This document shows, in pieces, positions 23,239 through 63,297 of a stretch of DNA of 64,000 nucleotides (the stretch's first letter is position 1; every line of letters starts with the position of its first letter). Position numbers and translations under genes: made by a program. The DNA comes from Klebsormidium nitens (taxonomy: Eukaryota; Plantae; Klebsormidiophyceae): positions 124,001 to 188,000 of the forward strand of contig DF237040.1 in NCBI GenBank assembly GCA_000708835.1, read 5' to 3'. The notes under the pieces are model-generated. The model did no database searches and was not told the DNA's origin. It saw only the letters and a list, made by a program, of their open reading frames with translations.

Positions 23239-24326
23239 TGCTACGAGTATGATTGATGGCTTCCCCCAAATGCTAGTGCCTTGATGGTAGTGGTTGTTAT
23301 AAAACCGCCTTCCTTTGCATGCATGGCACCATTTGACAAGAGAGAGGGACCATCGGAGAGCAGGTACTGATTCTACCGGTCCACCTACTACCCACCCTCC
23401 GTGTGCCGTTTCCTGACGCTCCAAGGACCCAGCACTGGCACGGTGGGCAGGGGCAGCAGCCAAAACGGGTCCGCGTGTTGCGACAATTCCAACGTTCGAG
23501 CTGCCGTGACGTGTTTTCTTGATCACGCAAGGTAGAATCAGTACGCCGCATTCCCAGGCCCGGCATACAAACCCGGAGCAGCTAGGGTGCGCGCTGGTGC
23601 TGCCACTAGGGTCCTAATAATAGGAAGACAGCCCATGAGCCTGCAAGGCTGAAGACAGCCTAGCTGCTTCCAGATTAAATCTGCTGCACATGCAGCCATG
23701 GGCACATCATGGCCGCTCGTGTACTTTGTCCACATTGCCGTGACAGTACAGCATGCACTAAGCCCATCAATATTGAGAGACGTCGGTGGTTGAAATTCAA
23801 AACAAGTGTGCGTTGTACTTTGAAATGGCACACGTTGGTATGTTATATGCGCGCGATCGAACGCTTTGAATTGCCAAATTGTACGATCTCGCCTCCACGG
23901 CACACATGTCATAGTTCTTCCCTAGCTGATTGGGGTCAATGGTTCTTCGGACCTAGGCGGCTTCATAAGCACATCGGCGGGCTAGCTAGTTTGCTTGGCA
24001 TCGTCATAGCTTATGATTGCACGCAAAGGGCCATAGGCTGCAAGCCCTATTGGCCTGCCTGACTGACATCTCGTCTTTGTCACTGCATTAGTGTGGTGGC
24101 GCAAACAAGTACAGACAGTTCAACGCTACAATGTTATACACCAGAATTCTTCACCAAGCAACGACGAATTTTAAACGGCAATATAGAGATCGGAATGTTC
24201 CTGTTTCAGGACTTTATACACAAATGGTAAGCAAGCTTGTTCAACAGCGGGACAAACGGATAGGGTGAACGAGCCTCCAGCTTGAGTTTCCAAACCCCGC
24301 TTATTTCTGGAATTCAAGACGAATCT

Positions 24327-40900: not shown

Positions 40901-42467
40901 TCGACTGGTATACGACAAGGCCCTCCCGCGCAACCTTGAGAGAGCTGTCGGGCCTGATTTGTCAGCAGAGAATCTGGTGGTAGTTTGTACCGGGCGTAAA
41001 CATGACGTTACATCGTTCCTTGCCTTTCCGCAGAAAGTACGCCGAAGCAGTCGACTGGTATACGACATGGCCCTCCCGGCGCAACCTCTAGAGGGCTGTT
41101 GATTTGTTTTTTGAGCAAACATTTTCTGATCTATTTCATACCACCAATATCTCGGGCGGCAGTTCCTACCGGCTGTATTACAACAAAACATCGTTCCTTC
41201 GTTTCTGCAGAAAGTATATTGTAGACGGGTATGCGACAAAACCTTCAAAAGGGCCGTTGTTCTTGCATTCTGAGCGGATATTCCGGGTAGTGATTCTGAT
41301 GACAAAACATTGTTCCTTCGTCTCCGCAGAAAATACGCCGAAGCAATTGACTGGTACGATAAGGCTCTGGGCCTGTGTCCCCGCTCCGCCAGCACCTATG
41401 CCGCGCTCGGCTACACGCACCACCTCATGGTGAGCCGTGACGTCACCTTGATGACGTCACGAGGCAGTCACGTGCTTGCATGACCTCAGAATTGGCCCCT
41501 GCAGCGGCCGCTGATTTGTGAGGCGAACGGCCCCACTCGGCGACACAAACGAAGTCAAGAACATGTCGCCGCCTTTTTGGCGGTCAGACCATAGTGTATG
41601 GCTGCTGAACGGAGGCTCGGCTAAAGTCTTCTTTGGCCCGACAAGAGAAGACCACCGGGGTTTGGTAGGCGATTGACTGAATGACGAGTCTCACATTTGC
41701 GAAAAGAAGAAGGCTCTATTGCCTTCTTCTGTTCGCTTTATGGCACGCGGTTGCGTTATTCGCTTTCAAAAAACGATTGATAAAGCTGTCCGCTTCAAGC
41801 CGATGCAGATGCAGGGACTATGCTTGCACTCTTGGCGAGCAAAGCAACAGGGGTTTGTCCGCTGGTTCGCATCTGACGGCCTCTTCAGATTTGCTGAACG
41901 ATTGCAGTTCCTTATTCGTCACGCTTTGACGTCTCGAGAGCCGTTTATACCCGCCTGATGGAGCTGGCTGGATTTTTTTTGAAAGATCTTCTCATAACCT
42001 GAAAACGCTTCTCTACGCGTTGACCCCCTTCTGGTTTGGCAAGCTTTTTGGGAGTTTGGAATGGAGTTCCGCTGACATGGTTGACCAGCTGTTTGGAAAC
42101 GTTCGAAAGCTCCCTTTTTTGACTGCTCTTGTTTTGAACGCAGAAGCGTGTGTGTTGAACGCGGACGCCTCTTGCTTTCGTCATCCTGACATCAGAGCTG
42201 CGGAGCTAGGAGCGTCGTAGTTCTAGTTTTATCTCTTTTTAACGGTTTGCTATGGCTCTAAATTTGAGTTCGTTGCTCCCCTTCTTGCGACCATAGTCAC
42301 AGCTCCTCTTCTTTATTTTCCAGGATCAATTGACTCTTGCGATCGAGTACTACCACAAAGCTCTGGGGCTGAAAGCGGACGACACCTTCACCGCCGAGAT
42401 GCTGACACGCGCGCTCGAGGACGAAGGCGCTCGATTCGGGATGGGCGGGGGAGAAGAATTTCTGTAG
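28985..42467 (+). CDS. APC6: Anaphase-promoting complex subunit 6 (CDC16), TPR protein, ~540 aa, 13 exons
   Basis: join(28985..29119,29897..30001,30487..30612,30971..31044,31449..31488,31739..31784,32002..32081,32766..32944,33496..33696,39089..39214,40225..40491,41330..41429,42324..42467) = 1623 nt, all GT-AG, phases consistent. Motifs HLYSSAIFFADKL, FKYLAARCL, DPYCYEAFE, AWFAVGAYY, QDESDQAMAAYRTAARLFPGCHLP, DPLIYNELGV, VNLGHALRK, YYHKALGLKADDTF. Confidence 0.96.
32390..32600 (+). repeat. Two degenerate copies of the start of APC6 exon 8 in intron 7
   Basis: gaggagcgcgc core at 32401 and 32560, against exon 32784 (cagcggctgtttgaggagcgcgccgtggag). Confidence 0.75.
38981..39031 (+). repeat. 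Duplicated acceptor + first 13 codons of APC6 exon 10
   Basis: aaacag|gatcaacgagcctggacagttcttttgcgcctgcgtggttg against aaatag|gaaatccacgagtctggacagctccttcgcgccggcgtggctg. Confidence 0.9.
39880..40135 (+). repeat. Two degenerate tandem copies of acceptor + 5' part of APC6 exon 11 (167-bp period)
   Basis: AG|GTGCCAC starts at 39891, 40058 and 40225 (the real exon). Confidence 0.92.
40517..40570. repeat. Degenerate (CGTTY)n pentanucleotide microsatellite in APC6 intron 11
   Basis: tttcgtttcgtttcgttccgttcctttgtgttccgttccgtttctgttccg. Confidence 0.75.
40720..41270 (+). repeat. Array of four degenerate copies of acceptor + 5' part of APC6 exon 12
   Basis: GCAG|AAA(T/G)TA starts at 40884, 41034 and 41211, plus a more decayed copy near 40725; the real exon starts at 41330. 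The intron tail acatcgttccttcg..gcag is shared between units. Confidence 0.9.
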
Positions 42468-42767
42468 AACTCAGTTCCAAGCTTCGACACGTTTGCTCTT
42501 GATGGATCTTACAGAGGAAGCAAGGTCGAAGACCCGCGGGTTATGCAGCGGCCACGCAGCATTTTGAAGTGCTTCCGGAAAAACGGTCTGTCAAACCGCG
42601 ATCTTCTCTTCAGGAGTCGATCTCAAATCGGTCGAATCAATCGTCATCATCAACGGCCGGGTCCATCATTTTTGGGCCGAAATCCCGGCCGCCGGGAATG
42701 ATCATTACACTTCTGGCATTGTCTGCTAAGTCCGAAGTCGGTCCGACCCGGAAGTTGAAAGTTTGAA

Positions 42768-43564
42768 GTACCTACCGTGGTCCGTGCCTCCTTATACCGT
42801 AAGCACCAACCTTAGTAGTACCGTACTAACATGCCGGTTGGTCATCAATTAATTCAACGGGCGTGTTGGTACGGTACGCAAGCAGCAAAGTGACGGACCA
42901 GATTAGAAGTGCAACACTCTGGGGCCCCACAGCCGTTGATGCGGGAATGGATAAGCACAACCCACATCCAGATCAGGGCCCAGGCACCTTTTGCCGCTTG
43001 CGGCTCCACAACTTTTGCAATCATTTGCTCACGCGCTTTGCGGTACCCAGAGTCAGTAGCTTACGGTACTGTAGTACTGCACTTCAAGCGGTACTGCAGT
43101 ACTGAATCCTGGTACCACTGACTCCTCCAAGCTCCAGTACTGAGCTACGGTACTTATACCGCGTTGAGCGCTCCCTATCTATGACTAGTTAAAGGTATAT
43201 CTAGATAATAATGTGCCAGCGTACGGACCGTATGTACAGTACCTAATACTACCTAGCACCTAGTACCTATTACCTGGTTCTACCAGGATACCTAGCAAGG
43301 TATTGCTGTGAATGTAATAACTAGCTAGGCACGTACGGTAGTGTGAGTCTGACTCTCAGATTGACACACCTACTGCAGTCAGTACAGGCTGACTTTAGGT
43401 ACCTGTGACGAAGAGCTAGAACCTAGAGCAGGCTCGAGTTTCGACCTACTAGGTAGTACGTGAAAACAGATAAAAGCAAAACCTTCTCTTCACATCCTCA
43501 AAACCGCCTGTTTCCACTATTCGGGTACTCCGGTCTCGCCGCAATTCCGGGCAATTGCCAGTAC
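42768..43564 (+). promoter_or_regulatory. Dense GTAC (SBP-domain / copper-response element core) cluster upstream of the secreted Cys-rich gene
   Basis: 23 GTAC counted in 797 bp against about 3 expected, including four CCGTAC/GTACGG and five CGGTAC. The regulatory meaning is inferred. Confidence 0.65.
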
Positions 43565-43579
43565 CTCCAGCTTTGCGCC

Positions 43580-45746
43580 ATGGCGAGCGTCACGCGCAGT
43601 GCTGTGCTCCTCCTGGCGCTTGTCGCGATGGTCGTGAGCGCAACCGCTGCACGGATGGATCCTGTTCAGGTGAGCAAGGCATACCTTCAAAAGTATCTAC
43701 TTTGAGAGGATTGTGAAGTTTGACGGCGATGCGTGCGGTTTGAACCTTTGCCACATGACTGAATCTGGTCAGCCTTCAACGGAGGCCATTGAGCAGATGC
43801 TTTGATTTTGATTGGCAGCAGACCGGTGCCTGAATCGGTTTTGTCAGTGCAAACACATTTCCTTGATTCGAGGGCGCGCAAAATCAGCTCCTCTCTGAAT
43901 GCGTTTCGTGACCAGATTGACTTATACAACCCGCCCTTACATCTGCATCGACCCCTTGTTACCTACTAACACGTACGAGTAGCCACATTCCCCTTTCTGG
44001 AATGAGTCTGATTGCTGTACAATTGAGCCGAGTTGCATGTTCCTTTGCCAGAGAGTCTGATGACCAAGGATGTTACAGGCCAAACCTCCTCTGGTCAAGT
44101 TTGGATTGGAGATCATAGGGCTCTTGGTTCTGCTAAACTTGGCCACTAACTACATTCATCAGGCTTTGCATTGCTAGTCAAATGCACTGACTTGTTAACT
44201 TCTCAACGTCTTGAGAGCTTGCAGCGACCTTTGGTTGACCTAGTCAAATGCACTGACTTGTTAACTTCTCAATGTCTTGAGAGCTTGCAGCGACCTTGGT
44301 TGACCTAGAAACTTATGTCAAAAGTGTCAAGGGATAGCATTCAAGAAGCTTCTATGCAGGATTAATACTTGCGCATACAGCAACTTCTGTGGATGCAAAA
44401 AGATTTCATGTTTGCTTGATTTTTTGCAGGACGTTGCTGCCTCGGAGGCCAGCCCTGACCTCGAGCAGGTGAGCCAACGATTCCAGGAATTTTTGACTCT
44501 GCCAAGAACAGGAGCTTGTGTTTTAGATGGACGCTTTCTTGGTTTAAAGAACAGGAAAAAGCCCTCTTTCGTACACGAGCCTAGCCCGAAACCTGGCGGT
44601 AGTCATAAGATTCTCTGTTTGTTGAAGTTGGCCCTACCAGTCCTTCCTCCTATTCGTGTGGCTGCTTAGTCTGGTCTGATGATCTGCGTGACTTCCATCT
44701 GTTTGAAGCTTGCAGCACCCCGACCCCAAATCATGTCTATGCAAAAACGAAACTTATTTGGAAAGATGTTCGTTCGGCAGCTCCTTTTGAGCGCGTGTTG
44801 ACTATCCAATCGTTGGTTCTTTGCAGGATGCCTTGGAGCTTCCTGGCCGCTCGCAAATGTATGGCTGTCCGAAGATTGCTTCCAGTTGGTGCCAGGGCAG
44901 AACGGGTGTCTGCAACCCCAACGACACGTGAGTTATCCGGCTCGTCACAGGTTTTTTTTGGCGGTTGACCACAGTCGGTTACGGGCTGTTACAAAGCTGG
45001 TTGACTGTCTAATGACCAGACTCGAGCGGTAACCAGGTTTTAAACATGGCTATAACGCGGTTATTGGTCATTAAAGAACCGGAGGGAAGTTTGGTTATTG
45101 AACCTAATTAGCAGCCAAACCTTCCTGTGCGTGCAGTTTTGGGTCACATCTGGCTCCAAACGGTTCAGAGACTTCGGTCGCACAAGTTGTCACTAAGTCC
45201 AGTTTATTTCTGTAGGCTTTGGAAGATCCTGGGTACGTTCTCTGAGCGCGCCACAATGCTCTACGCACCGGAGTCCTTGCTAGGTTTCGGCTAGGAACTG
45301 CGAATGAGTTGCAGCTGTGCGTGAAGGTTCAACCGACTTGTACTGTCGTCACGCGCTTCCGTCTGACTCCGAGTGTCACTCGGAGTTGTTTTTTCGGTTA
45401 CCAAAAAGCAGAAAATCTCGACTCTTGCCCAAACCGAGGCGAGTAAAGGAGTAGTGTACGGGAACGGAAGAGGTCCAATGAGCTACTTTACGGTCCATGC
45501 CAAACTTCGGCTTACATGACGTGAGGCATACTGACCATAGATACAGCCACTAACAACAGCATTCTGCCCGAAAGCGCTTCGTGGAAAGGAAATAACACAG
45601 GCCGTTGCCATTTTTGCAGTGCGCAATGCAAATGCGGCTCGCCCCCCTGGGTCAAGAAGCCGTGGGAGTGGACCATGGGTCGTCTTTGCGACGCCGGGCT
45701 GAAGTGTCAGGTCAAAGGGCAGGATACAGTTTGTGTCCCTAAGTGA
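43580..45746 (+). CDS. Small secreted cysteine-rich protein, 118 aa (signal peptide + acidic propeptide + 8-Cys domain), family not recognised
   Basis: join(43580..43669,44430..44468,44827..44927,45620..45746) = 357 nt, GT-AG, phases 0/0/2. MASVTRSAVLLLALVAMVVSATAARMDPVQDVAASEASPDLEQDALELPGRSQMYGCPKIASSWCQGRTGVCNPNDTAQCKCGSPPWVKKPWEWTMGRLCDAGLKCQVKGQDTVCVPK*. Mostly missed by the ORF track. Confidence 0.82.
44174..44308. repeat. Near-perfect 66/65-bp tandem duplication in intron 1 of the Cys-rich gene
   Basis: Units start at 44174 and 44240 (ctagtcaaatgcactgacttgttaacttctcaa(c/t)gtcttgagagcttgcagcgacc(t)ttggttgac); one substitution and one indel. Confidence 0.92.
45366..45386. other. Perfect 10-bp inverted repeat with 1-nt loop
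   Basis: actccgagtg-t-cactcggagt. Confidence 0.85.
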
Positions 45747-46514
45747 CTGATTCCAGAAATAAGTTAGGGCTGACGATGATCAGGGTTGACGGGCTCGGCT
45801 TATGATAGACGGCCGGTTCGTGTCGGCTATTATACAGCGAGTGTTGACGTCGCTTCTGGTAGCATTTCGTCACAAGAGCCGTCAACTGTGCAAGCTTGGT
45901 TTGCCACGTGTGCGCCATGCAGTCAGTCAACCATGTTTGTTACGAAGTTAGGGGCTTTGTGTTTCATCCTTCGTCGTCCAGGGCCGTAAAAAATGACGTT
46001 ATTAGCGCCAAGTCTAGCTCATGCGATTCACTACGACCGGACCACTTTAATCAAGTACAAGTGTTCGGCGGCAATGTCTTGATTGAATGTTGATTTGAGC
46101 GCCCTTTGCGTTTGTGACCCCTCAATCCAGATGTGTTTTTAATATGCAAGACTTCCTAACTCTCAAGTTGACGACAGCCTTTAATTACATGCGATTTGCC
46201 ATGCGAGATATCTTCAATCTCTCAGGCAAGAACACGCACCGAGCCTGGCCGTTTAGGATTGGAGGAGGTTTACGCAAGTGACTTGTATTTGACATGGAAA
46301 CGCAAGATGGTCTGTAAACGGTGCCGTCTCGGGCCGGCGATATGTTCTTGCTTGATATCTGATATGTGTCGTGGAAAGTTCACGTACAGCTTGTCAAGTA
46401 GTCTCGAGATCGATTCGGACAGCAGCGCATTCCAACATCACCGTCCATGCAAAGTTTCCCGGACGTCACCGGCTGCAGCTAGATGATCGCGACCTTCTTT
46501 GCGCATCTGTATTC

Positions 46515-46530
46515 TGACACTCGAGTGTCA
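46515..46530. other. Perfect 16-bp palindrome
   Basis: tgacactcgagtgtca. Confidence 0.85.
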
Positions 46531-46608
46531 TGTCTCGACATTAGAAAGAGTGGAAGGATATAGCGCTTGATTTTGCGTGTCAGAAAAAAGAACAAGAGAA
46601 ACTGGATA

Positions 46609-46877
46609 TACCGTAGAGACATTGTCCATTCGCACTAACTTTAATTATTTTTAGGGCTTGCGAAAAAAGTTTTATTACTTTCGACGCAGGTGCGAAAATG
46701 CGGATCAAAAATAATATCTGTAGAAGCTACAAAACCTGCAAAATGAGGCTAAAAATGGTCCAAATTTGGAAAAAGCGAAAATTCTAATAATATCGTCGAT
46801 GCTGGTGCGAAATGACAAAACGTTCATAAATAGATATTCGCACCAAGGTGGTGCGAATGGACAATGTCTCTACGGTA
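46609..46877. mobile_element. MITE, Tc1/mariner-type (265 bp, 46611..46875, TA target-site duplication)
   Basis: TA-CCGTAGAGACATTGTCCATTCGCAC (46609-46635) is the exact reverse complement of GTGCGAATGGACAATGTCTCTACGG-TA (46851-46877). The interior is AT-rich, non-coding and has internal GGTGCGAA / TTCGCAC repeats. Confidence 0.88.
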
Positions 46878-49800
46878 TTCGACTTCAATTATTGCGTTCA
46901 GATCTGCTTTGCCCGGCGCCCTTGGACAAAACACAATGAGCACCTGCGCGATGGTACGTTGGGAGGTGCCCACCTGCCGGCGAAGATCATCCACGGTTGA
47001 TCAATAGAAAACTGCTTTGTAATGTACCTTCTTAAGTCGCACAAGTGCTGAAACCCTCAGAATCGAATTTTTACGGAGTCGTTCTCGGATGACTCACCAA
47101 TGCTTCCGCTCTGCAGTTGTGTAGTATCTGTAGAACATCTTCTTGCCCCCCATTGTCTCTTCCGAGACGCTTGCCCTCAACAAGCGTCAAGTTTTGGGCT
47201 TCGACCGTTGACTTTCTTTTCCATTTCGCAACGGACCGACTGCACCAGCGCGAATCTTCGCCGTCGAGTTGCGAATTCCGAACAGTTTTCCTGACCGGAG
47301 GCAGGATTTTGGTCAGATCAAAGGAGCAAATAACTAGATAAGCAGCTCGATGTTTCGACGTCTCCGAGCAACTCTCCCCCGGCGGATCCCTCTGCCTTAA
47401 TTAAGGCATCTGCTTAGTAAGCGCTGCAATATCCTGCTGCGCGCTCCGCCCACTTACGGCCTGCCACGTGTCACCCTGCCCCTGGGAGCTTGTCCGGGGG
47501 GCTTCTCCCCTGTCTTGGTCATTCCGTGGTACGCAAACAGCTGCCAAAGGCAGCTTAGAGCTTCATATGCGGATGGTGAAAGATGCTGGTATATCAAAGT
47601 TCTCGCTGTACTCCTCTTTTCGAGACTTCCAGGTTCGACTTTGTGCGTGAGAAAAAGAATCGGCAAGGTGGTTGTGACGAAAGCAGAAACTCCGTTTGCC
47701 AGTAGTCGCTCTCTCGATCGCCGTTGTCAATGGAGTCCGCTCACATGAACGTTCCGGCGACTTCTGGCCATTCCGTTTCCGCACGTTTTCCCATTTTGCC
47801 TTGCCTATGTTCTCTCCTCTCAGAGCGTAGGGCCGAACACCGTTCCTTTCCGTGTCGTTCCGTCCTCTCAGACGGGGGACGGAACGGTCAAGTAGCGAGT
47901 GGCGCTTGAGATTGTGGATCCGACACTTGCGAACCTCGTCTAAAATATCTGGTTCCGGTCAGCGCAAGGTATTTCGCCGTCTGGTTTTCTCCTCAGGACT
48001 AGCAAGTAAAATTCTCCTGCCTCAATCGTAGTCGGCTCTCCGTCAGGCAGCCCTTCTTTCCGGCCTCCAAAACGCCCGTTTTGGAATTGATTTTTCTTAA
48101 CCCTGTCGTAAAGCTTTCTAAGTTTGCAGCTTCTAATTTTCGCATGGCAATCGCCCGCAGTTTTCTCGTCCTCAGACTGCGACTACAAAGCAAAGAATGG
48201 CCTATGTAACCCAGGCCCCAATATGTCGAGTCTCCTCTACAAAAGTTCAACTCTTGTATGAAAGCGTGGCTCTTTCTTTTTCAGCCACGTGTCCTGAGGA
48301 CCCAAGCTGTATTTCTTCCGAACTACTTCCGCCTCTGACTTCTGTTCTTAAGGAGGCCGTATCCGAAAGGAAAAATAGTTTCTAAGTGAATCGCAGTCGA
48401 TGTCGAAAGGGCATCTGGTTCTTTACCGCGTACAGAAGCAATCTGGTCAAAAAAGCGCAACATTGATTGTCGAATGAGTGCGTTCCTTGAATAGCAACTG
48501 GCTGAAAGTCAAATCATTTTGAGGATGTAATTACAGCGATGTCTCTCCATTTCTATTGGTATTTCGACAGCAGAGTGATCACGCCAGGATTCTCAGCGAC
48601 TGTCGGACTCGCCAGAGTTTTCAGCCCACCGTCGGGCTTCGGAGCGAGCGGCGTTCGGATCGAGGATGCACGTGGCAAGCAAGTTGCGGGGTTCGAGGAT
48701 CAAGATCTTGAAGAACCGTTTGTATCGAGTCCAGGCAATTAGGACCTAACTTGTAGTCGTGATATTCGAGAAGAAGGAAGGGGATTACTCTCGACAGCTG
48801 GCCTGATTAAAACCCATGCACAGGGCAGCCAAAGAAGGAAGATGACCTAGTAAACGAGTATTCCCTGATACTTTGAAACATTTCTCTAGTAGATTGCGAA
48901 CAAAAGTCAGCACGACAATATATCTCTGCTTTCAAAGACGGCACGGATTCCCCTGGGCGTCTGCGGAATCCTCGAACGGACCTCTTTCGTCGAGAAGTAA
49001 CCTGGAATGTGGGCAAAGACCCACTGGTTGTCTGACGATCACTCACCTCAACAAGGGACTTCTAGACTTTTGGTTGCCAAGAAGCTCATTGGGTGAATTT
49101 TACCTTCCTCTTACCGTCTGAGAAAGGTCTGAGGCAATTAGTGTGTGAGACTACAGAACTTAAGCTGTTCCCTGTGCTAAGTGAATTGAGCGAAGTGTTG
49201 AGACTAGCTGGGCAGTTAGCCGACAATCTTGAGCATATCTTGCTCTGATGCATCTTTTCCGTAGGAAGATAAACGATTCTAGATTCCTAGATACAATCTT
49301 CCAACTTGAACTCCGTCTGCGACCAAAGCTTCCGTTAAGGACAGGGGACATCATTGAAGGCCTTGGGGTTACATAAGTTCCAAACCAAAGTGTCGTTTAA
49401 AATGGTCAGACGGAACGCAGGCAAGAGCATCTTGAAATGAGATCATCTTGCGAAGCTTCAATCATGCTTGGAGGAGAGTTCCCTAGAGACGCGGCAGCTA
49501 AGGTAGCAAGTCTTGCAGTTGTCTAATTTACCGCTTTCTTGCTGGCTTTATCCGGCTGAAACTTTGAAAATCCGTGTGAGCAAGAAGTGGCAGATATGTA
49601 CGAAGTCTCTTGTCGCGATGAAGAACAAAGGTCCAGAGCTCTACGCGGAGAAGCAGTCCGCCCTGGCGCTCTTTTCTCTGAGGGGGTGCAAAGAACCCAA
49701 GAAGGAGAAGCGATAGATGAGGCAGGCGAACAGCCCATAGCACCGTTTTCTTCTCCAGCTAAAAGGAGCGAAGCGTAGCATATGATAAGTAAAACGTCGC

Positions 49801-53000: not shown

Positions 53001-56000
53001 GATCCCCCCCAAAACTTCAGCGGCGAATACGACGATCTACGTTGGGGCGCTGCTGACGTGGCAAACCCTGAACTGGGCCGAACCAGATCTGGGTTAAGTC
53101 GGAACCAGTCTGGGTTTGGTCCCGACCACTCCGGGTTCGGTCGAGATGAGAGCGGGTTAAGACAGAACGGATCGTCCTTAGTCCCGCCCAGAAGAGGGGT
53201 TCGACCCCCCAATCAAGAAACGGCTTTCCAAACGGACAGAGAAACCGGTCAGCATCGGAGGCTGGAACGGAACCCTAGCCAGTTGCCGGGAGTTGCGGGA
53301 GCGGGACACGTGGCAGACTCGCGGGGCTTACATGGTCAAGGGTCGGCCAGAACCGTGAGGTTAGACCCTAACGGGGACGGTCAGGTTAGGACGGGGGAAA
53401 GCAGGGGGCGTCTCAGAGAGGGTAGCGCGGAAATGAAGAGGACGCTGACGTTTCCCGCCGCAGAAGAAGGCACGTGTTCTTTGCTCGTTCGCTTCCTTCT
53501 TGTCAGCTTCCTTCAATCAACCCTGGTGTATTCATTTGTAAATGCCAAAGTTTTTGAAGATTTTTCTTGTTGGAAGGTATTTCGAAGCTTCTTATCATCT
53601 CGAACTTTCAAAAGGCAAAAGCTTCTCCTCACTTCGAACATTTGTAACGGCAGAAAAGGCTTAGGAGGGTTCGAAACGTGCTAGGCGGAAGTCCGAGCTG
53701 CAAGTCAAGCATCCATAGGTATCGAAGCTGCGCAACCGCTCCGATTGAGTCGATCTGACTGTGTTCGTTCCCATATCGATCTCTATCAATCCTCCTTCCC
53801 TCTTTCTGGGCCTCGAATGATTCTCCGGCTTAAGATCCTCTCTTTGAAGAGTTTCCAAGTAAGTGGCGATTGCGCAGATTGGTTCAAACCACTATATTAT
53901 CGCCTCAAGGCTGAACGGTCCCCGTCCGAGGGTTCCCGTGTAATGTTTTGGTGCGTCATGTTCCTTCGAACGGTCTGACCGACTTGAGGGCTGACCTTCG
54001 ACTTCGATCCGTTCACCTTTCTGGTTCAAACGGTGAAAGATGGTTTGACGAAGTGTATGCTCTACGATGATGACTCTACACAAGTTTAGAGGGCTTTCAA
54101 AGACCCACGCTGAAGTACTCCGAAATTGGCCTTTTATTGAAGATGGTCTACTCAAAGAGATTGATATCATCCTCTGCGCGCTTCTGTCAAGAAGTTGTCG
54201 TATCGCTTTACACGCTAGGACAGCGAAAACCAGAGTGTCTCAATCCGATTCAAATTGTCGTCGTTTTTACAATCCTCACTTCCCTTGCAGCCATCTCGAA
54301 GCTCTTCAGTTGGGCACGCACCAAACCCGCCGATGCTCCCGAAAGAAGCACAGCGCCGCTCCTCCCAAAAGCAAGAGACCCACTCAGAGTCGGACACGTG
54401 TACGTCCCCAGTCAACCCTCCTGGGGTCAGCGAACCAAACCCCGAACCTCAGCCGGCGACACCGCGGCCGCGGCCGCGGCTCCCAGCGCTGACGTTATGG
54501 GAGCGCGCGCGCAAGAGAACGATCTGGAAGCAGCGCGCCACAGTTTGAGCGACTTGGAAGAGGGGCCTTTGGGCGAGCATCATGGCGGGGGGCTGATCGG
54601 AGGAGCGCATCTGCCCCCCCTTGGGAGAGAAAGGCCGACGTATGCTAATCAAGGGATGGAACGGACTTCCGCTGCCCTGGGCGGAGCGAGCGGAATGGTT
54701 GCTGGGCGAGGGCTGTTCCGGCCGAAGTCGGGGGTTCCGCTTGCCAACCAAGACACGCTCGGAAGAGCGAACAGAAGGGAGCCGGAACGGAGGGACGGAA
54801 GAGTCAGCGATGCGGAGATGGAAGAGGAGCCATTGGGAGATCTGGACGAAGGAAGACAGGGAGTCGTCATACGAGGATTGGGACCGATTGAAGAATCTGG
54901 TTTGAGAAGCGCAGTTCTTGGACCAGGGAAAACCCCGAATAGATGGGAGAAACGTGGGGTGCCGGATAGGAGGAAAAGCGTCGACTCGCAGAGTTTGGGA
55001 TCCACGGTGACCAAACGCGTGTCTGACATCGGAAGACACGTGGGCGGCGAAAAGGGCGCCACGTTGCTGGATAAGGATTGGGCTGTCGCGAAGCAAGAGA
55101 CCGGAGATGGGGCTCCCCAAACCAAGGGTGAGGGTTTACTTTTCGAAACGCAGCGTTTTCGAGAAAACGAGAAGGCTTTCGGCGTCGGATCACGACTGGA
55201 GAAAGAAGCCCGTGATGGAGAAAATAATCTGGGTCAAGCGGAAGGGGTTTCCGGGTTTGCGGAGGCGACCGCGGCCACCCGAGAGGGCTATCGCGTGGAT
55301 GACGTCAGGAATCCGGGTTTAGAAAGAACGTCAGGTCTGCAGTCCAGTGCTGAGGAAAGGAGCGGACGGCGGAATTCCGTTGCGCTGAGCGGGGAGCGTT
55401 TCCGCGGAGTCGTGTACGCTTCTCCGGACCCGGTGAAAGCGGAATCCTTCGACAAGGTGCGCGAGTGGTTCAGCAGGGGGGACCACGGTGAGAGCAATCC
55501 GGGCGGCGCGTTTACCGCGGCGGAATGTTTTGGAGCGGAACGGAACGGTGCGGAACGGACTGGTCTAGAGCGCGACGGAACGCAACGGGAGAAAATGGAG
55601 GCGGGGACCCGAATCAAAGAAGAGGAAAGCCGTTCGAAGCGGCAGGTGGCTTTCGAGAGCGGACGATCGGAGAGGAGAGGACATTCGGACAGGAGGGAGG
55701 TCCGAAACGGAAACGGAATAGGCCGGTACGTTCAGGCGGAACGGAGTCCGCTCGCGAGCAACCAGGACTATTGGGAGAAAGAGAGCCTGCTCTTCGGAAA
55801 GAGGCCCCCTCGGTGGGACGCTTCCCCTTCCAAAGCCGCGCACGTCGCGCAAGTTTCTGAAGGCAGGAACGAGACAATTGCGCGGGGCCCCCAACCCACT
55901 CGCGCAACGTTTCGGGACGACAAGGCATCCGAAAAGGTGGGCGCGAAATCCGGGGAGAGCGGCAGAGCGCGACCAAGTGACACGTGGCAAACAGGGAAGT

Positions 56001-56170
56001 TAACCAGAGGCGGCGGGGATGTGCTGCGCGCGCGGGAGAAGCTGGCGGAGGAACTAGAGGCGGGGGGATGGACCCCCGACCGGGCGGACGTGGAAATGGT
56101 CGACTGCCTGCTCTTTGATCTGCCCGAGATGGTGGCCTCGGTGCAACACCTCCGATCGCAGCTAGAATAG
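50072..56170 (+). CDS. Uncharacterised single-pass type I membrane protein, ~1190-1205 aa
   Basis: join(50072..50201,50614..50742,51322..51573,52243..53469 [or ..53421],54291..56170), all phase-1 junctions. Signal peptide MGPPSHGGSVSFRVFTLCLLVGSWLVERGAA, ~200-aa Cys-containing beta-rich ectodomain, Pro/Thr/Asn stalk, TM KWVAIVVPMLVICVLTSVVGGLVFFFGL, and an ~800-aa disordered tail. Confidence 0.72.
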
Positions 56171-57435: not shown

Positions 57436-57467
57436 GTTCCGGCCTTGTTCCGGCCTTGTTCCGGCCT
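57436..57467. repeat. 11-bp tandem repeat x3
   Basis: (gttccggcctt)x2 + gttccggcct. Confidence 0.85.
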
Positions 57468-58493
57468 GAGTCTTGCATTTGCATCCGCCGGAGCCACTGC
57501 AATCGATTGAATACGTCTGGCCTCAAGCTTAGCGCGCGCGCTGGTGCAGTCCGTGACATCAGCAAAAAGCAACAGCTGTCCGTAGGCATATGTATTATGT
57601 ACGAAATATCAGGGGGCAAGGAATATTCTGTTCGCACCGATGAGGCAACTGGTGGCCGGTGACCACCATGCACCAGAGGTACCGGTGACCAATCTCTACT
57701 GCTATATACTAGGTACTTATCAGCTAGATTAGCTAGCTCGATCCCCGGACTGGAGTGGTAGAGTGTCCGGCTTAGAAACGGTGTGTTCAGAATTTGGCAC
57801 AAGAAGAATTTTATAGAAAGCGCGTTTGAGCCTTGCAAGTTGCAGTTGCCATTGGGGAGATTGAGCTCTGAGTCCTGCAACTCTGAGTCTAGGTACTACC
57901 GCGGTATAGGATACGGTACCCTGGAATCTGGATAGGAAGAGACTGCTCGCCTGCATGGGCGTCAATAGGCTGAGGATGCTCGCAGCTCCACAAACAGAGC
58001 TCTGACCCTGTTTTGGGGCGCCCTTCTCTCTTGAGCTGCGCGTCACTCAGCTCCACTCAATTTCACGGCTTCTAAAAAGGGGCAGCGTCCTTAGGCTTTA
58101 AACCCGATTCTTAGGGGTCCCTTAAATAGCATCTACGACCGGCGAGCGGGGGTTTTGCCAGCTTTGTACAGCACTTGCTCTCATTGGGGTGTTTCTAGCA
58201 TGTCATTGGCAAGGAACACCAGACGCTCTTGTCTGTCTGTCGCGGACAGGATCCTGGTCAGCCTGACAAGGGGGCTTCCCATTGAAGGGGCTGCTGAACA
58301 GGTTACTCTGCAGAAAGCTGACTTCAGCTGAAAAGTTAATTCATTCAAGTTAGCCTGAAAGTCTCGCCAGCTCCCTTGCAGTAATGCTGCAAACACCATG
58401 TAGCTGACCGCAACTAGGCGTGTCTCTGCTACAGTGCTAGTGAGAACAAGAATGGGCCGGGGAGCTGCTTTGAGGAACAGTTCTGATAGGAAG

Positions 58494-61400
58494 ATGCCTC
58501 GCTACCGAGGCTCTGGTCTTGCCGTCCTTCTTTTGGCAGTATGTTGTCTAACCGCTGCAGTATCTGGTCAGATTGATGATGGGGCGGCGAGCGAAAAAGT
58601 CAGTCTTCGAGGGGCGAGCAGCCTAACCCTAGAAAAGGACCACGGCCATAAACCAGAGCAACTAGGACAACAGGGAAATTCTCCAGAGTTCCTCACAGAG
58701 GCGCTGTCTGCGGAGGCTGCCTCTAGGGTCCCAAGCATCAACACTGCGAAGGCGCCCCCCCTGAAACCCCGAGTAGCGCCCGTGACGGTAGCCTTTCTGA
58801 CGGTTCTCATGGCTCTTGCAACTGGCCTGGGGTCTGTCCCCTTCTTCTTTCTAGACATGAAGGGGAAGGGTTACGCTGGCATATGCAATGGGATGGCCTG
58901 CGGAGTGATGCTGGCGGCTAGCTTTGGGCTATTGCACGAGGGGGAGGCTTATGGGGGGGCGGAGTGCGTGGTCCTTGGTGTGCTCTTGGGGGGACTGTTC
59001 ATCCTTGCAAGCCAGAAGGTGGGGGAAACACCCTTTTCCTCAGTTTCTTATTCTGCTCAGCGACATTGTTCCGTCGTGTCAGAGGTGTCATTGATGTGCG
59101 TCATGCATGTAGAGGGCACACGGTCGTTCTCTGCCTTAAGGGGCCGAAATGGTGAATGCTGTTGCTGGCTCGGTTGATGGCTGGGGTCAATGGCAGACGC
59201 AGCTCATGCCAGGGAGTGAGGGGGCTTTCTTACTTGGTATGAGAAAGAAAGGCCGAAGTGAGCTAGGGGATCCCTTTCCAACCGCGTTGAGTTTGACCCA
59301 ATTGCAAGTTACTTGCAGCTGCATTGCATGCAGCTGAACGTCAAAATCAGCTCACGTCAGATTTGACTGTTTCCGCATTCAACCACATTCAGCAAGTGTT
59401 CAGTGTCGGATCATTTTTTGAACGTCGGCAGCAGGCACCCCGCAGCAGGAACTTGCATTCGGCTTGCAGCTCTCTCTTGTAGAGGGTAATGGAGTCTTGG
59501 CCCCGGACCCTCTTAAATTCGATGTTTGTGGAAGCGATCACATTTAGTCCCACATCGTCTTTGGAGCCAGTTTTTCAAATGCGTCTCTATCATTGCTTGT
59601 GTTCAAAGCCTGCTTTCCCTAGGCAGGGCGATACTCTCTGGCTGACCTTCGTCAAGCACCTGACACATGTCCGTTCCTTGCAGTATATGGCCCAATTTGG
59701 TGAGGTTAAACTGATGTCACTGGAGGGTGTCAATGCGCACAAGGCCGCCCTCATTGTAGCCATCATGACACTACATGCTTTTGGCGAGGGGGCTGGAGTG
59801 GGGGTTTCATTTGCGGGGCCTCGAGGGCTTCCGCAAGGGCTGCTGGTGACGATCGCCATTGCGGTGAGTCGAAGACCCTTTGCCGACCAGCGGACGTCTG
59901 TCTGTGTGGCAGTGGATGTTCGCTAAAACGGGTTTGGGGAGCTTTTTCCGGTGCGCTCTTGACGTTCTCCACATGGTCATGTATTTCCAAAAGTTCCTTG
60001 TGGAACAATTCCTCTATCTTGAAATGGCTGAGGTCCAGATTCCAGCACGGAAAAGCTGAGGTAAAACACGTGGTTAGTTTGACTTAGTCCAAATACCGTC
60101 CTTTCTGGCTCCTCTTTTCCTTTTGGTAGGCAAGTCTCTCCAGCGCATTGCAGTCGGCATGTCAGATCAAATGTAGCGGTTTTTGTCCCAACTAGCTTAC
60201 AATCTTTGATCTTCTTCCATCAATTCCTTGGCCCATGCATATAACTTCCCAGCTTTCAAGGTGGTGCTCTTACAGTAAACACTTTTTGAGTTTCACCACT
60301 CTCTCAAACTTTGAACTGCATCAGGATCATTTGTCATTCTTCATTTATCTCACCGCGGCTCTCAGATCCGACCTTCAAAGATCACCAAAGTAAATTGCTG
60401 TTCAGCTATTTGAGTTTTGATGTGCCTCAACAGACTTCGACCTGTACTGTGACTCTTTTTCCTCGGCCCCTCGGTTATTTCTATTGTTAGGTCTGTCCAG
60501 CAGCCCTGGTGTGGGGGCGACTCGTTTCCCTTCCTAGTTCCTGCAACTTCCAACACAGAGAGAGCCTAGGTCAGCTCCCTGGCAGATGCAGAACTCTCAC
60601 AAAAGACCTCTTGGCCAACGTAAATACTTCTGTTCTGTGGACCTGTAGTGCACCCTCCCTGTCCTCACGAGCCTACCTTAACCACGCTCATCACAGCGCA
60701 ATCTTTGGAGAAGACCTCTTCCTGGTTTTTCCGAAAGTACACGTCTGGTTTGCGCGTGATTCTATCTACATAGGACGTCAGCGAACTTGAAACCAGTGAC
60801 GTCGTTCCTGATAGATCTTCCAGAAAGTTGTCGTTCTGAAGCCGGACCTCAACCACTGTCAACAAATCCGTAGGTGCACGAGTCTGCCGGCCAGCATGGT
60901 CCTTCTCTTCAGACGCCAACTTGAACTATTCAGTGGAGCCAAAATATTTTGCCCAAAAAGTCCACCCGCATGTAGTAAGTCTCAACAAACACGTCCAGGT
61001 ACACAAGATCTTGGGGTGCCTGACGGTCAGCATGGTCCTCTCCTCGAATGGCTTTAGCAAACCCAATTCATTGGTTTATGACCCCACTAGACCCTTCAGC
61101 AGGTTGACCACTGGAATCCAAATTATCAACCCTCAAGCAGCGTGTCTTCCTCCCGAACCCAAACCTTTACCACTCCCAACAAATCCGTCGCAGGTGCACA
61201 ACATCCCCGAGGGTCTGGCGGTCAGCATGGTCCTCTCCTCGAAGGGCGTCAGCGCACGTCGCGCCATGCTCTGGAGCATCATCACTAGCTTACCGCAGCC
61301 GCTGGTTGCGGTTCCCGCCTACATGTTTGCCGAGACGTTCACCAAGTTCTTGCCGCTGTGCATGGGCTTTGCCGCGGGGTGCATGATATGGATGGTCTTT

Positions 61401-63297
61401 GCGGAGCTGCTGCCAGACAGCCTGGAGGTGGGGCGCCGTTTTCTTAACCCTTTCGAAACTTCAGTTGTGCAGCGTAACCCACCAAGGAACGCATGTTCCG
61501 AGTGACCGATATCATAGGATAATATCATACATTGGTAAATTGATCCAGCCCAAGCAACAATCGGTTTCTTTTGTTTATGTACTGGCGTTTTCTGAAAGAA
61601 TAGAGCAGGGGGCGCTTGCTTCACCCCCTAGTTCCCCTGTTCGGCTTTTTCTGCGACGGGTTCCATTGTCTTCTGTGACGGGATCCCTTCGTTTACGTTC
61701 TGCGTGCTTACGCTCGTCGCCTCTATCGCGTGTTGCTGCTTGCGCTGGCTTTGACGTCAACATCTGGCATCACTGAGCCGGGGAAGTATATCTGTTGGGA
61801 GAAGGCTCTGACGGGTTCCCTTCGTTTGTGCTGGGGTCTTTCGCCGTTGTGTTGTAGCACAGAGGTGCGTGGCGGCTGATCCACGTGGATGGTTTGTGTT
61901 GCATATGTTTCATGAACGGTGCAAGTGCTCGTTCTCAAGGGCTCGACAACCGCAATTGACACCAGCGTAAATCTCGATGTCAAAGCCTGAAATTCTCTTG
62001 ATTGAAAAGATGCTCATATTGAGCAAAGGTTTTGGTCGCCCTTGCTTCGAGGGGTTTGACAGCAAGATTGCTGGGTCGAGCTGTTAATCACGTGTACAGG
62101 ATCGTTCGAGCCAACTCCAGGATCTGCTGCTGATTCCTGCTTAAAAAGTTGTTCTCTTGTTGGAGCTTGTGCATATCTAACATAGGTAAGACGTCCTCAG
62201 CGCCTTACTGATTCGTGGATCGTTCAGCCAATTACACCTTTATTCGTCGCTTCGTGGGAAGCCAACCCCATCGCCAAATCCGCCTCCTTATCATAGGACG
62301 CTTCGTGGAGCAACTCGACCATCGCTTATGGTCGCCCTGACCAGTGCTTATTCTCCTGCAGGAAGCCAGTCCCACGGCAATCGCCGCATCTGCCACCCTC
62401 TCCATCGCTTTCATGGAGGCTCTCAGCTGTTTCATGAAGACGTTGGAGCAAGGCCCTGGTTCTCAGAAGCGCTCCCCTTCCACCCCCCTCCTCTGGTCTC
62501 TTCTCTTTGGTCTCGGTCCCGCTTTCGGAGGTCTTTTGGCCGTTTTTGCGCAGCGCGTCGCAAAGTTTTCGCAAGCCGGGATGATGGGAGGAGCGGCGGG
62601 GCTCATGCTCGCGCTCGGCGCGGCTCGACCAGTACAATTGCTTTTGGGGGATCATCCGCCGTGGCTAAACATGGTTTTGTTTCTAGGGTTAGGCGCGGTT
62701 ACGTTCGGGTTAGTGGGTCACTGGGCCGTCGGGCGGGGCGTGCATAAGAAGACGGACGAGGAAGAGGCGGTGCTCAAGAGTGACGGGAAATTGTTGGACA
62801 CGCCGGTTTCTAAAGCGGCCATGTTAGCGGTGACGGCGATTTTGATCCACGCATGGGTTGAGGGTTTGGTGCTTGGGGTTGCGGCTCGGTTAGCGGAGGG
62901 CAACATCGGTTTGCACATGCTAGCCCCAGTCGTGCTGCATAGCTTGCCCCGGGGGGCGGCAGTGGCCGCCATAATCGGCGCTCTTAGCAAGAGTCCTCGG
63001 GGCGCGTTACTGAGTTCGGCGTTGTCAGGGTTCGCGGGACCGGTTGGAGCCGTTGTGGCGTTAGCACTTGGGATCAGGCGGTTACAGCCGTTGGATGATG
63101 TGATGATGCTTGCGAGCGGAGCAATCATTCTGGGCGCGTGGAAGCACCTGCTGCCAAGGGCTTGGAGGTTAGATGGAAGAAGAACGCTGGCGGGGCTGTT
63201 TGTAGGAGCCGGTTTTGCTGCGATGAGTTTCTGTGGTACGCATCTGTTGTGCGCACACACATTCTTGTGCGTAGCTGCTCCTGATGCAGTGACTTGA
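58494..63297 (+). CDS. ZIP-family (ZupT/GufA-like) metal transporter, At3g08650-like, ~624 aa, 4 exons, signal peptide
   Basis: join(58494..59018,59684..59863,61194..61427,62362..63297); the start could be 58452. Motifs ALATGLGSVPFFF, NGMACGVMLAASF, TLHAFGEGAGVGVSF, AIAVHNIPEGLAV, SLPQPLVAVP, GFAAGCMIWMV, HAWVEGLVLGV, LHSLPRG, APDAVT*. Confidence 0.94.
60862..61060 (+). repeat. Two degenerate copies of acceptor + start of ZIP exon 3
   Basis: AG|GT(G/A)CAC starts at 60874, 60999 and 61194 (the real exon). The 60999 copy reads VHKILGCLTVSMVLSSNG against VHNIPEGLAVSMVLSSKG. Confidence 0.9.

What the first reader, a model, noticed from the sequence alone, without database searches (positions are those of the whole stretch)
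42768..43564. GTAC-saturated promoter: candidate copper-deficiency (CRR1/SPL7-type) switch
I counted 23 GTAC in 797 bp against about 3 expected, including four CCGTAC/GTACGG SBP cores. The cluster runs right up to the ATG of the secreted Cys-rich gene, and no other intergenic stretch in the window approaches this density. GTAC is the established core of copper-response elements bound by the SBP-domain factors CRR1 (Chlamydomonas) and SPL7 (Arabidopsis), whose targets carry clustered GTACs. The inference is that this gene is a strongly induced member of a Cu-deficiency (or CRR1-linked hypoxia/Ni) regulon.
Basis: partly seen in the sequence, partly recalled or inferred. Interest (0 to 1): 0.8.

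Follow-up and report, generated by a model that had tools for sequence, protein, structure and literature searches.

The report
GTAC-packed palindromic promoter island
In front of a small secreted, cysteine-rich orphan gene of the alga Klebsormidium nitens lies an 800-base stretch with 23 copies of GTAC, the core site of plant SBP-type (copper-sensing) regulators; the pile-up is real, but its link to copper is untested.

Summary
There are 23 GTAC in window 42768-43564 against about 1.9 expected (Poisson P about 1e-17), and no other 800-bp stretch of the window has more than 7.

The genome is Klebsormidium nitens (DF237040.1). The tract lies between the stop of an APC/C TPR-subunit gene (42467) and the ATG (43580) of KFL_000910290. 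Spliced RNA contigs show that this gene encodes a 118-aa secreted 8-Cys orphan protein. GenBank calls most of the tract an intron, but no RNA joint supports that. At least 43205-43579, holding 10 GTAC, is 5' leader.

GTAC stays enriched after correcting for the tract's own dinucleotides (23 vs 7.6). The flanks favour GTACT, and the SPL7 ChIP motif GTACTRC occurs 6 times against 0.09 expected.

The tract is also generally palindrome-rich, and it holds two strong inverted repeats that control spacers lack.

The best reading (about 0.4) is a homotypic cluster of SBP-factor sites in the promoter and leader. Copper specificity is untested. A neutral or structural palindrome island is nearly as likely.

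Unchecked scan notes list at least seven similar GTAC islands at other promoters of this genome. I could not sample the rest of the genome or an orthologous spacer.

The parts
42768..43564 (.). GTAC-dense tract: 23 GTAC, TA-rich in a G/C context, palindrome-rich
   Evidence: 23 GTAC seen against 1.9 expected. TA odds ratio 1.46 against 0.57 in the rest of the window. 8-bp palindromes 12 against 3.6 expected.
42818..42877 (.). Block A: inverted repeat with 23-nt arms (42818-42840 and 42855-42877) and a 14-nt spacer. Each outer end carries a double GTAC (GTACCGTAC / GTACGGTAC).
   Evidence: I1, 87% complementary; hairpin z -7.7 with RNA parameters and -6.0 with DNA parameters. None of 179 control intergenic windows reaches z <= -4.
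43043..43153 (.). Block B: 8 GTAC in 111 bp. CGGTACTG(T/C)AGTACTG occurs twice, 25 bp apart, and CAGTACTG occurs twice. It folds into a 17-bp stem inside an outer stem (43050-43125). It lies about 50-190 bp upstream of the first well-supported transcript contig end.
   Evidence: D1, D3, I3, I4; z -5.5 RNA, -4.1 DNA. In one search, contig X11 folds back on itself at 43103.
43196..43211 (+). TATA-like TATATCTAGATAATAA, just upstream of the 5'-most end of the spliced-gene contig
   Evidence: Read directly from the sequence. The X5 contig joined to the spliced exons ends at 43205. That this is a working TATA box is inferred.
43205..43579 (+). Minimum extent of the 5' leader of the Cys-rich gene; holds 10 of the 23 GTAC
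   Evidence: Contigs continuous with the spliced exons reach back to 43205 (X5), 43355 (X8) and 43365 (X11). Contigs cannot give a true start site.
43580..45746 (+). Coding region of the secreted 8-Cys, 118-aa orphan protein. Exons: 43580-43669, 44430-44468, 44827-44927, 45620-45746. The 3' UTR runs to about 46040-46116.
   Evidence: Three GT..AG joints seen in 3-4 RNA runs. Translation. The product equals residues 82-199 of GAQ81810.1 / KFL_000910290. No homologue or family was found.
42324..42835 (+). Last coding exon (stop codon ends at 42467) and 3' UTR of the upstream APC/C TPR-subunit gene (ANAPC3 domain, 540 aa). Transcript contigs end at about 42650, or at 42835 in one run.
   Evidence: contigs X5, X8, X11; spliced loose end at 42323. 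(gene call with Pfam ANAPC3/TPR).
42676..43469 (+). 'Intron 1' of the GenBank model KFL_000910290 (GC..AG), which would remove most of the tract; probably a modelling artefact
   Evidence: The model was deduced from P0010 laid on the window. No such joint appears in four RNA runs, while contigs run unspliced across 43469. The donor is GG|GCCGAA and there is no pyrimidine tract; the three real introns have GTGAG...T-rich GCAG. The signal peptide starts at Met82 of the model.

Best explanation
The tract is a cis-regulatory island of KFL_000910290. It is an unusually dense homotypic cluster of GTAC sites spanning the proximal promoter and the 5' leader. The sites are of the kind recognised by SBP-domain factors, of which Klebsormidium nitens is reported to have two.

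Proposed mechanism: one or both SBP factors occupy many sites at once. Blocks A and B lie upstream of a TATA-like box, and about 10 further sites lie downstream of the start. This would make transcription of the small secreted Cys-rich protein depend steeply on the factor's activity.

Shown here: the enrichment and its specificity to GTAC, the position relative to the transcribed gene, and the flank bias. Inferred: that SBP proteins bind, and that binding activates transcription. Speculative (about 0.15 on its own): that the signal is copper deficiency.
For: - Enrichment: 23 GTAC against 1.9 expected. It survives correction for the tract's own dinucleotide content (23 vs 7.6 +/- 2.5), whereas CTAG, GGTA and AGTA do not.
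- Uniqueness: it is the only such stretch among six promoter-bearing spacers of the window. It has no copy elsewhere in the window.
- Position: block B (8 GTAC in 111 bp) lies about 50-190 bp upstream of the 5'-most contig end joined to the spliced exons, with a TATA-like box in between.
- Flanks: 18 of 46 half-sites read GTACT. GTACTRC, the motif enriched at SPL7-activated genes (PMC9516184), occurs 6 times against 0.09 expected from the window and about 1.4 expected given 23 GTAC. CCGTAC occurs 4 times.
- Trans factor: K. nitens has two SPL proteins, in groups 2 and 4 (PMC10796333).
- Precedent: verified SPL7 targets work through GTAC clusters near the start site. Deleting four GTAC in 65 bp abolishes FSD1 induction (PMC4682440).
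- Variable expression: the gene's contig depth relative to the neighbouring APC/C gene differs about ten-fold between studies. This is a weak hint that it is regulated.
- Unchecked scan notes place at least seven similar GTAC islands at promoters elsewhere in this genome.
Against: - There are no binding or expression data of any kind for copper or for SBP factors in this alga.
- The density (17 per 500 bp) is 3-4 times that of verified targets.
- Only 6 of 23 sites carry the canonical CGTAC. The overall flank preference is RGTACY.
- Four of the six GTACTRC lie inside one locally duplicated block, so they are not independent.
- Eight of the twelve 8-bp palindromes are not GTAC-centred. The tract also holds two strong inverted repeats that control spacers lack. 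This points to a process or function tied to dyad symmetry in general.
- ACCTA/TACCTA words are enriched as well.
- About 10 sites lie in transcribed leader.
- I could not show conservation in any relative.
- The other islands noted by the scan sit at functionally unrelated genes.
Confidence: 0.4

Rival explanations
1. The tract is a palindrome-rich, low-complexity island. It would have been produced by local duplication, slippage and template switching of short TA-centred dyads (GTACTGCA, CAGTACTG, TACCTAG, GGTACC). It may help keep the promoter open or form cruciforms, but it is not read by a GTAC-specific factor, and the GTAC excess is a by-product of how the sequence grew.
For: - Weak tandem arrays: GTACTGCA x4.8 and TACCTAG x3.7.
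- A 25-bp local duplication carries four of the GTAC (D3).
- 8-bp palindromes number 12 against 3.6 expected, and 8 of them are not GTAC-centred. TA odds ratio is 1.46 against 0.57 elsewhere.
- Two inverted repeats reach z <= -5.5, while none of 179 control windows reaches -4.
- The flanks are symmetric (RGTACY) rather than the canonical CGTAC.
- The density is far above what known SBP targets need (PMC4682440).
Against: - GTAC alone stays about 3-fold above the tract's own dinucleotide expectation.
- 18 of the 23 GTAC lie outside the two tandem arrays.
- There is no dominant period (best lag z 2.6).
- The tract lies exactly at a 5' end, and scan notes put its look-alikes at promoters too.
Confidence: 0.3
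2. The tract is the decayed remnant of one or more small foldback or MITE-like elements, or of a dispersed satellite, that happened to insert between the two genes.
For: - Block A is a 60-bp inverted repeat with 23-nt arms, and block B is a nested hairpin.
- This genome carries transposons seeded with arrays of short palindromes (scan notes s1-324298 and s1-332482, unchecked).
Against: - There is no second copy of any part of the tract in 64 kb.
- No terminal repeats or target-site duplications bound the tract.
- No transposase-like ORF is nearby.
- There is no single conserved repeat unit.
Confidence: 0.1
3. GenBank is right. Most of the tract (42676-43469) is a spliced intron of a 199-aa KFL_000910290 whose transcription starts in or before the 3' UTR of the upstream gene, so the GTACs are intronic.
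For: - The deposited model GAQ81810.1 has this structure.
- In one study a contig runs without a break from the upstream gene's last exon through the tract into the gene (X1), so some transcription does cross the tract.
Against: - No 42675-to-43470 joint appears in four runs that all show the other three introns. Contigs run unspliced across 43469.
- The donor is GC with a poor context and there is no pyrimidine tract.
- The extra 81 residues are Arg-rich and have no family. They would bury a canonical signal peptide that starts at Met82, which sits in a good GCCATGG context.
Confidence: 0.05

Closest known systems
GTAC (CuRE) clusters in SPL7-dependent promoters of Arabidopsis (FSD1, COPT2, ZIP2, YSL2, MIR398)
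   Same: Several GTAC cores are concentrated near the start site. The GTACT and GTACTRC flavours are present. An SBP-family factor exists in the organism (PMC4682440, PMC9516184, PMC10796333).
   Different: Verified targets have 4-6 GTAC per 500 bp, or 8 in the FSD1 ChIP peak. This tract has 17 per 500 bp and 23 in all. About 10 sites lie in the 5' leader. The tract is palindrome-rich beyond GTAC and forms strong hairpins. The target is an orphan secreted Cys-rich protein, not a known copper-economy gene. No copper data exist.
Copper response elements bound by CRR1 in Chlamydomonas (CYC6, CPX1, CRD1)
   Same: The GTAC core is recognised by an SBP domain in a green alga (Kropat et al. 2005, cited in PMC10796333; the details are from my own knowledge).
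   Different: One or two CuREs suffice there. I know of no report of islands with dozens of GTAC. Klebsormidium is a streptophyte, and its SPL proteins group with land-plant groups 2 and 4 rather than with CRR1.
Homotypic clusters of transcription-factor binding sites in general
   Same: Many copies of one short core lie in a few hundred bp at a promoter, and part of them arose by local duplication.
   Different: The bound factor is unknown here. The co-enrichment of unrelated palindromes is not a usual feature.
Palindrome arrays of Mutator-like transposons in the same genome (scan notes s1-324298 and s1-332482, unchecked)
   Same: Arrays of short palindromes lie in promoter or intron DNA of K. 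nitens.
   Different: Those are about 20-27 copies of one conserved 17-base palindrome inside a transposon with its own genes. Here there is no single long unit, no transposase and no second copy in the window.

Membership tests
SBP-box / copper-response (CuRE) promoter cluster | Multiple GTAC cores, more than chance | tested here: met
   23 against 1.9 expected, and 23 against 7.6 after shuffling the tract itself.
SBP-box / copper-response (CuRE) promoter cluster | Cores lie in the proximal promoter of a transcribed gene | tested here: inconclusive
   Blocks A and B lie upstream of the 5'-most spliced-gene contig end (43205), but about 10 cores lie in the leader. Contigs cannot fix the start site.
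SBP-box / copper-response (CuRE) promoter cluster | Flanks fit known SBP preferences (CGTAC/CCGTAC, GTACT, GTACTRC) | tested here: inconclusive
   GTACT 18 half-sites, GTACTRC 6, CCGTAC 4. However, only 6 of 23 sites have CGTAC, 4 of the 6 GTACTRC lie in one duplicated block, and the overall preference is RGTACY.
SBP-box / copper-response (CuRE) promoter cluster | The organism encodes an SBP-domain factor of the SPL7/CRR1 type | not tested
   Literature only: two K. nitens SPL proteins, streptophyte-algal members in groups 2 and 4 (PMC10796333). I could not fetch these genes.
SBP-box / copper-response (CuRE) promoter cluster | The SBP domain binds the sites, and mutating GTAC abolishes regulation | not testable with these tools
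   Needs EMSA or DAP-seq and reporter assays.
SBP-box / copper-response (CuRE) promoter cluster | Transcript responds to copper status (or Ni or hypoxia) | not testable with these tools
   No Cu-deficiency RNA-seq of K. nitens was found. The public runs are coded and were available only as contigs.
Satellite / minisatellite | A repeat unit with a defined period | tested here: not met
   TRF finds only two short, weak arrays covering 65 bp. Autocorrelation shows no dominant lag (best z 2.6).
Transposable element / MITE | Further copies, terminal inverted repeats at the borders, target-site duplication | tested here: inconclusive
   There is no copy in the 64-kb window and there are no bounding repeats. 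The rest of the genome could not be searched.
Spliceosomal intron (GenBank model of KFL_000910290) | Splice junction present in RNA; consensus splice signals | tested here: not met
   No 42675/43470 joint appears in four runs that show the gene's other three introns. The donor is GC and there is no pyrimidine tract.

The most novel reading that the evidence does not exclude
Klebsormidium nitens has a class of GTAC-saturated, palindrome-rich promoter islands: this one plus the seven or more noted elsewhere by the scan. They would act as super-clusters of SBP-factor sites. They would define the regulon of one of only two SBP proteins in an early-diverging streptophyte. That would give a direct view of what the SBP/GTAC system controlled before land plants, whether copper economy or something else such as secreted Cys-rich proteins.
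Probability: 0.2. Interest if true: 0.65.

Novelty: new variant of a known kind. Interest (0 to 1): 0.4.

Why it matters
SBP factors and their GTAC core are found only in the green lineage, and SPL7 and CRR1 are the master copper sensors of plants and green algae. Klebsormidium has only two SBP genes. If a handful of very dense GTAC islands mark their targets, the ancestral streptophyte regulon could be read almost directly from the genome and then checked with one DAP-seq and one plus/minus copper RNA-seq experiment.

If the islands instead reflect a palindrome-generating process at promoters, that is a genome-architecture feature not described for this model alga.

In either case the GenBank model of KFL_000910290 needs correcting: the product is a 118-aa secreted protein, and the tract is spacer and leader, not intron.

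Tried and rejected
- Paralogue or orthologue promoters. tblastn of the protein on the window found only the gene itself. The full HMMER search with exon 4 found only the GenBank protein, plus summed weak matches to fn3 repeat proteins that pairwise BLAST shows to be spurious.
- Metagenome scans. The Cys-rich protein found nothing. The upstream gene's last exon found only distant relatives, 55-62% identical and without GTAC islands. A first attempt failed on a size limit.
- A related Klebsormidium species. The Logan contig from SRR23617307 (L002) has a ZIP gene 94% identical at the protein level, but only its exons align, and the contig ends about 7 kb short of the tract. The orthologous spacer could therefore not be compared.
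- Sampling other K. nitens promoters or copper-regulon orthologues (COPT/CTR, FeSOD, CYC6). No tool gave access to the rest of the assembly, and exact look-ups of window ORFs failed.
- Minisatellite reading: rejected.
- ncRNA or miRNA reading: only sub-threshold Rfam matches, MIR1094 at 22 bits against a gathering score of 80.
- Universal feature of this alga's promoters: rejected for this window.
- Protein family and fold. There is no Pfam hit. The AlphaFold2 model has pLDDT 58, and the Atlas model has pLDDT 0.52 with only weak look-alikes among small disulfide-rich carbohydrate-binding domains. I did not run a fold search on so poor a model.

Full report
OBSERVATION

The window holds 172 GTAC, and 23 of them start between 42768 and 43561. 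Outside the tract the rate is 2.36 per kb, so 1.9 are expected in 797 bp (Poisson P = 1.3e-17). No other 800-bp window has more than 7. The last GTAC ends 16 bp before the ATG at 43580.

WHERE IT IS

A window ORF matches "hypothetical protein KFL_000910260 [Klebsormidium nitens]" at 100% identity. Its contig is DF237040.1 of GCA_000708835.1, and window position 1 corresponds to record position 124001. This agrees with the organism named in earlier scan notes.

Public RNA contigs from four studies were laid on 41500-47400. They show two things.
- The upstream gene is a 540-aa APC/C TPR subunit with an ANAPC3 domain. Its last exon starts at about 42324, its stop codon ends at 42467, and its transcript contigs end near 42650, or at 42835 in one run.
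- The downstream gene is spliced at three GT..AG introns. Its exons are 43580-43669, 44430-44468, 44827-44927 and 45620 onward.

The downstream CDS gives a 118-aa protein with an N-terminal signal peptide and 8 Cys. Contigs continuous with these exons reach back to 43205, 43355 and 43365. So at least 43205-43579, with 10 GTAC, is 5' leader. A TATA-like TATATCTAGATAATAA lies at 43196-43211.

Lower-depth contigs also cover the distal part of the tract. In one study a single contig runs from the upstream gene's last exon through the tract. Contigs cannot give a start site or a strand, so the exact start remains open.

THE GENBANK MODEL

The only real match to exon 4 among 1.84 billion representative proteins is GAQ81810.1 (KFL_000910290, 199 aa). 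Its first 81 residues come from a 5' exon at 42543-42675, which lies inside the upstream gene's 3' UTR. That exon is joined across a GC..AG "intron" at 42676-43469, which covers most of the GTAC tract.

I consider this part of the model wrong, for three reasons.
- No such joint is seen in four runs that all show the other three introns, and contigs run unspliced across 43469.
- The donor is GG|GCCGAA and the acceptor has no pyrimidine tract, whereas the three real introns read GTGAG...T-rich GCAG.
- The extension would bury a canonical signal peptide that starts at Met82, in a GCCATGG context.

The tract is therefore spacer plus leader.

ANATOMY

- Specificity. GTAC itself is the enriched word: 23 seen against 7.6 +/- 2.5 after dinucleotide-preserving shuffles of the tract alone (maximum 16 in 1000). 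CTAG, GGTA and AGTA are mostly explained by composition.
- Composition. The tract has an inverted TA bias, with an odds ratio of 1.46 against 0.57 elsewhere.
- Flanks. They are symmetric, RGTACY: a 5' purine in 19 of 23 sites and a 3' pyrimidine in 16 of 23. GTACT accounts for 18 of 46 half-sites. GTACTRC occurs 6 times against 0.09 expected from the window and about 1.4 expected given 23 GTAC, but four of the six lie in one duplicated block. The canonical CGTAC is present at only 6 sites.
- Layout. Block A (42818-42877) is an inverted repeat with double GTACs at both ends. A 165-bp GTAC-free gap follows. Block B (43043-43153) has 8 GTAC in 111 bp and includes a 25-bp duplication of CGGTACTG(T/C)AGTACTG. 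Then come the TATA-like box, a TACCTAG-rich block with 4 GTAC, and scattered sites up to the ATG.
- Periodicity. There is no dominant period.
- Copies. No part of the tract has a copy elsewhere in the window.
- Other motifs. ACCTA/TACCTA words, which resemble MYB-type AC elements (a resemblance from memory, not tested), are also 16-48 times enriched.

The tract is palindrome-rich beyond GTAC. There are twelve 8-bp palindromes against 3.6 expected, and eight of them are not GTAC-centred. Blocks A and B fold into hairpins far stronger than shuffled controls.
- Block A: z -7.7 with RNA parameters and -6.0 with DNA parameters.
- Block B: z -5.5 with RNA parameters and -4.1 with DNA parameters.

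Of 179 100-nt windows from six other intergenic spacers, none reached z <= -4. One RNA contig even folds back on itself at 43103.

IS IT A GENERAL PROPERTY OF THIS ALGA'S PROMOTERS?

Not in this window. Using the GenBank gene calls, the five other promoter-bearing spacers have 0 to 6.4 GTAC per kb, against 20.7 per kb here. The mild maximum, 7 GTAC in 1.09 kb, lies upstream of the F-box gene.

Earlier scan notes list at least seven other dense GTAC islands elsewhere in this genome. All were described as promoter or divergent-promoter spacers, next to unrelated genes: PrmA/ARM, NADAR/DnaJ, a Cache-like gene, a secreted beta-propeller and a Cys-rich pair. These notes are unchecked and I could not fetch the sequences. 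Taken as a lead, they suggest a recurrent, promoter-associated class rather than a one-off.

COMPARISON WITH WHAT IS KNOWN

- SBP domains bind a GTAC core (PMC10796333).
- SPL7 targets carry 4-6 GTAC within 500 bp, and deleting four GTAC in 65 bp abolishes FSD1 induction (PMC4682440).
- The FSD1 ChIP peak has eight GTAC cores, and GTACTRC is the best-supported SPL7 motif in vivo (PMC9516184).
- K. nitens is reported to have two SPL proteins. Streptophyte-algal SPLs fall in groups 2 and 4, and group 4 has the C4 zinc-finger signature that I know as the SPL7 type (PMC10796333).

But the density here is 3-4 times that of any verified target I found. The flanks are only partly canonical. No copper data exist for this alga.

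THE TARGET GENE

The protein is an orphan.
- Word search: no hit.
- Pfam: no hit.
- Full HMMER search: no real hit. The fn3-repeat matches are sums of weak repeats and are spurious.
- Models are of low confidence: AlphaFold2 pLDDT 58 and Atlas pLDDT 0.52, with only weak look-alikes among small disulfide-rich carbohydrate-binding domains.

Nothing links it to copper.

VERDICT

The feature is real and striking. My best reading, at about 0.4, is a homotypic cluster of SBP-type sites acting as the promoter and leader control region of KFL_000910290. Copper specificity on its own is about 0.15.

Nearly as likely, at about 0.3, is a palindrome-rich low-complexity island whose GTAC excess reflects how it grew rather than a GTAC-reading factor. 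A TE or foldback remnant is about 0.1, and the GenBank intron reading about 0.05.

The decisive computations are a genome-wide island census, a check of copper-regulon orthologues and a comparison of the orthologous spacer. None could be run here, because the tools gave no access to the rest of the assembly. The one related-species contig I reached stops about 7 kb short of the tract, and the metagenome scans found nothing close.

Noticed in passing
window 42543-43469: The GenBank model of KFL_000910290 (GAQ81810.1, 199 aa) probably has a false 5' exon inside the neighbouring gene's 3' UTR and a false GC..AG intron. RNA supports a 118-aa secreted protein starting at 43580.
   Followed up: yes
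window 43663-44223, 44444-44724 and 45083-45467: Contigs inside all three introns of the Cys-rich gene have depths similar to, or above, the spliced-exon contig in some runs. The spacer downstream (46228-47400) has none. This suggests substantial intron retention, or other transcripts in the introns, rather than DNA contamination.
   Followed up: no
window 44174-44308: A 66-bp tandem repeat, 2.1 copies, 97% identical, lies inside intron 1 of the Cys-rich gene.
   Followed up: no
window 43311-43316: A minimal start-stop upstream ORF (ATGTAA) lies in the 5' leader. Two further upstream ATGs (43211, 43231) lie near the likely start region.
   Followed up: no
window 23239-24326: The spacer upstream of the F-box/EID2_C gene KFL_000910260 has a mild GTAC excess (7 in 1.09 kb, 6.4 per kb), the second highest in the window.
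   Followed up: partly
window 57599-57919: A short stretch shares the tract's vocabulary (TAGGTAC, CTAG, GCTAGC, GGTACC; 5 GTAC in about 320 bp). It lies upstream of an ORF that starts near 58434, and its left edge (57447-57639) aligns partly with the related species contig L002.
   Followed up: partly
window 60921-63297; L002 7347-8565: Two ZIP-family (PF02535) coding stretches lie here, with no GTAC cluster upstream. In the related Klebsormidium contig, a unit of about 100 bp that matches window 61155-61254 is repeated at least five times.
   Followed up: no
window 12001-13000 and 54137-56170: Two stretches have strong purine skew and high GC, with long ORFs on both strands and no Pfam match. 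The second lies inside an annotated 1207-aa gene of unknown function.
   Followed up: no
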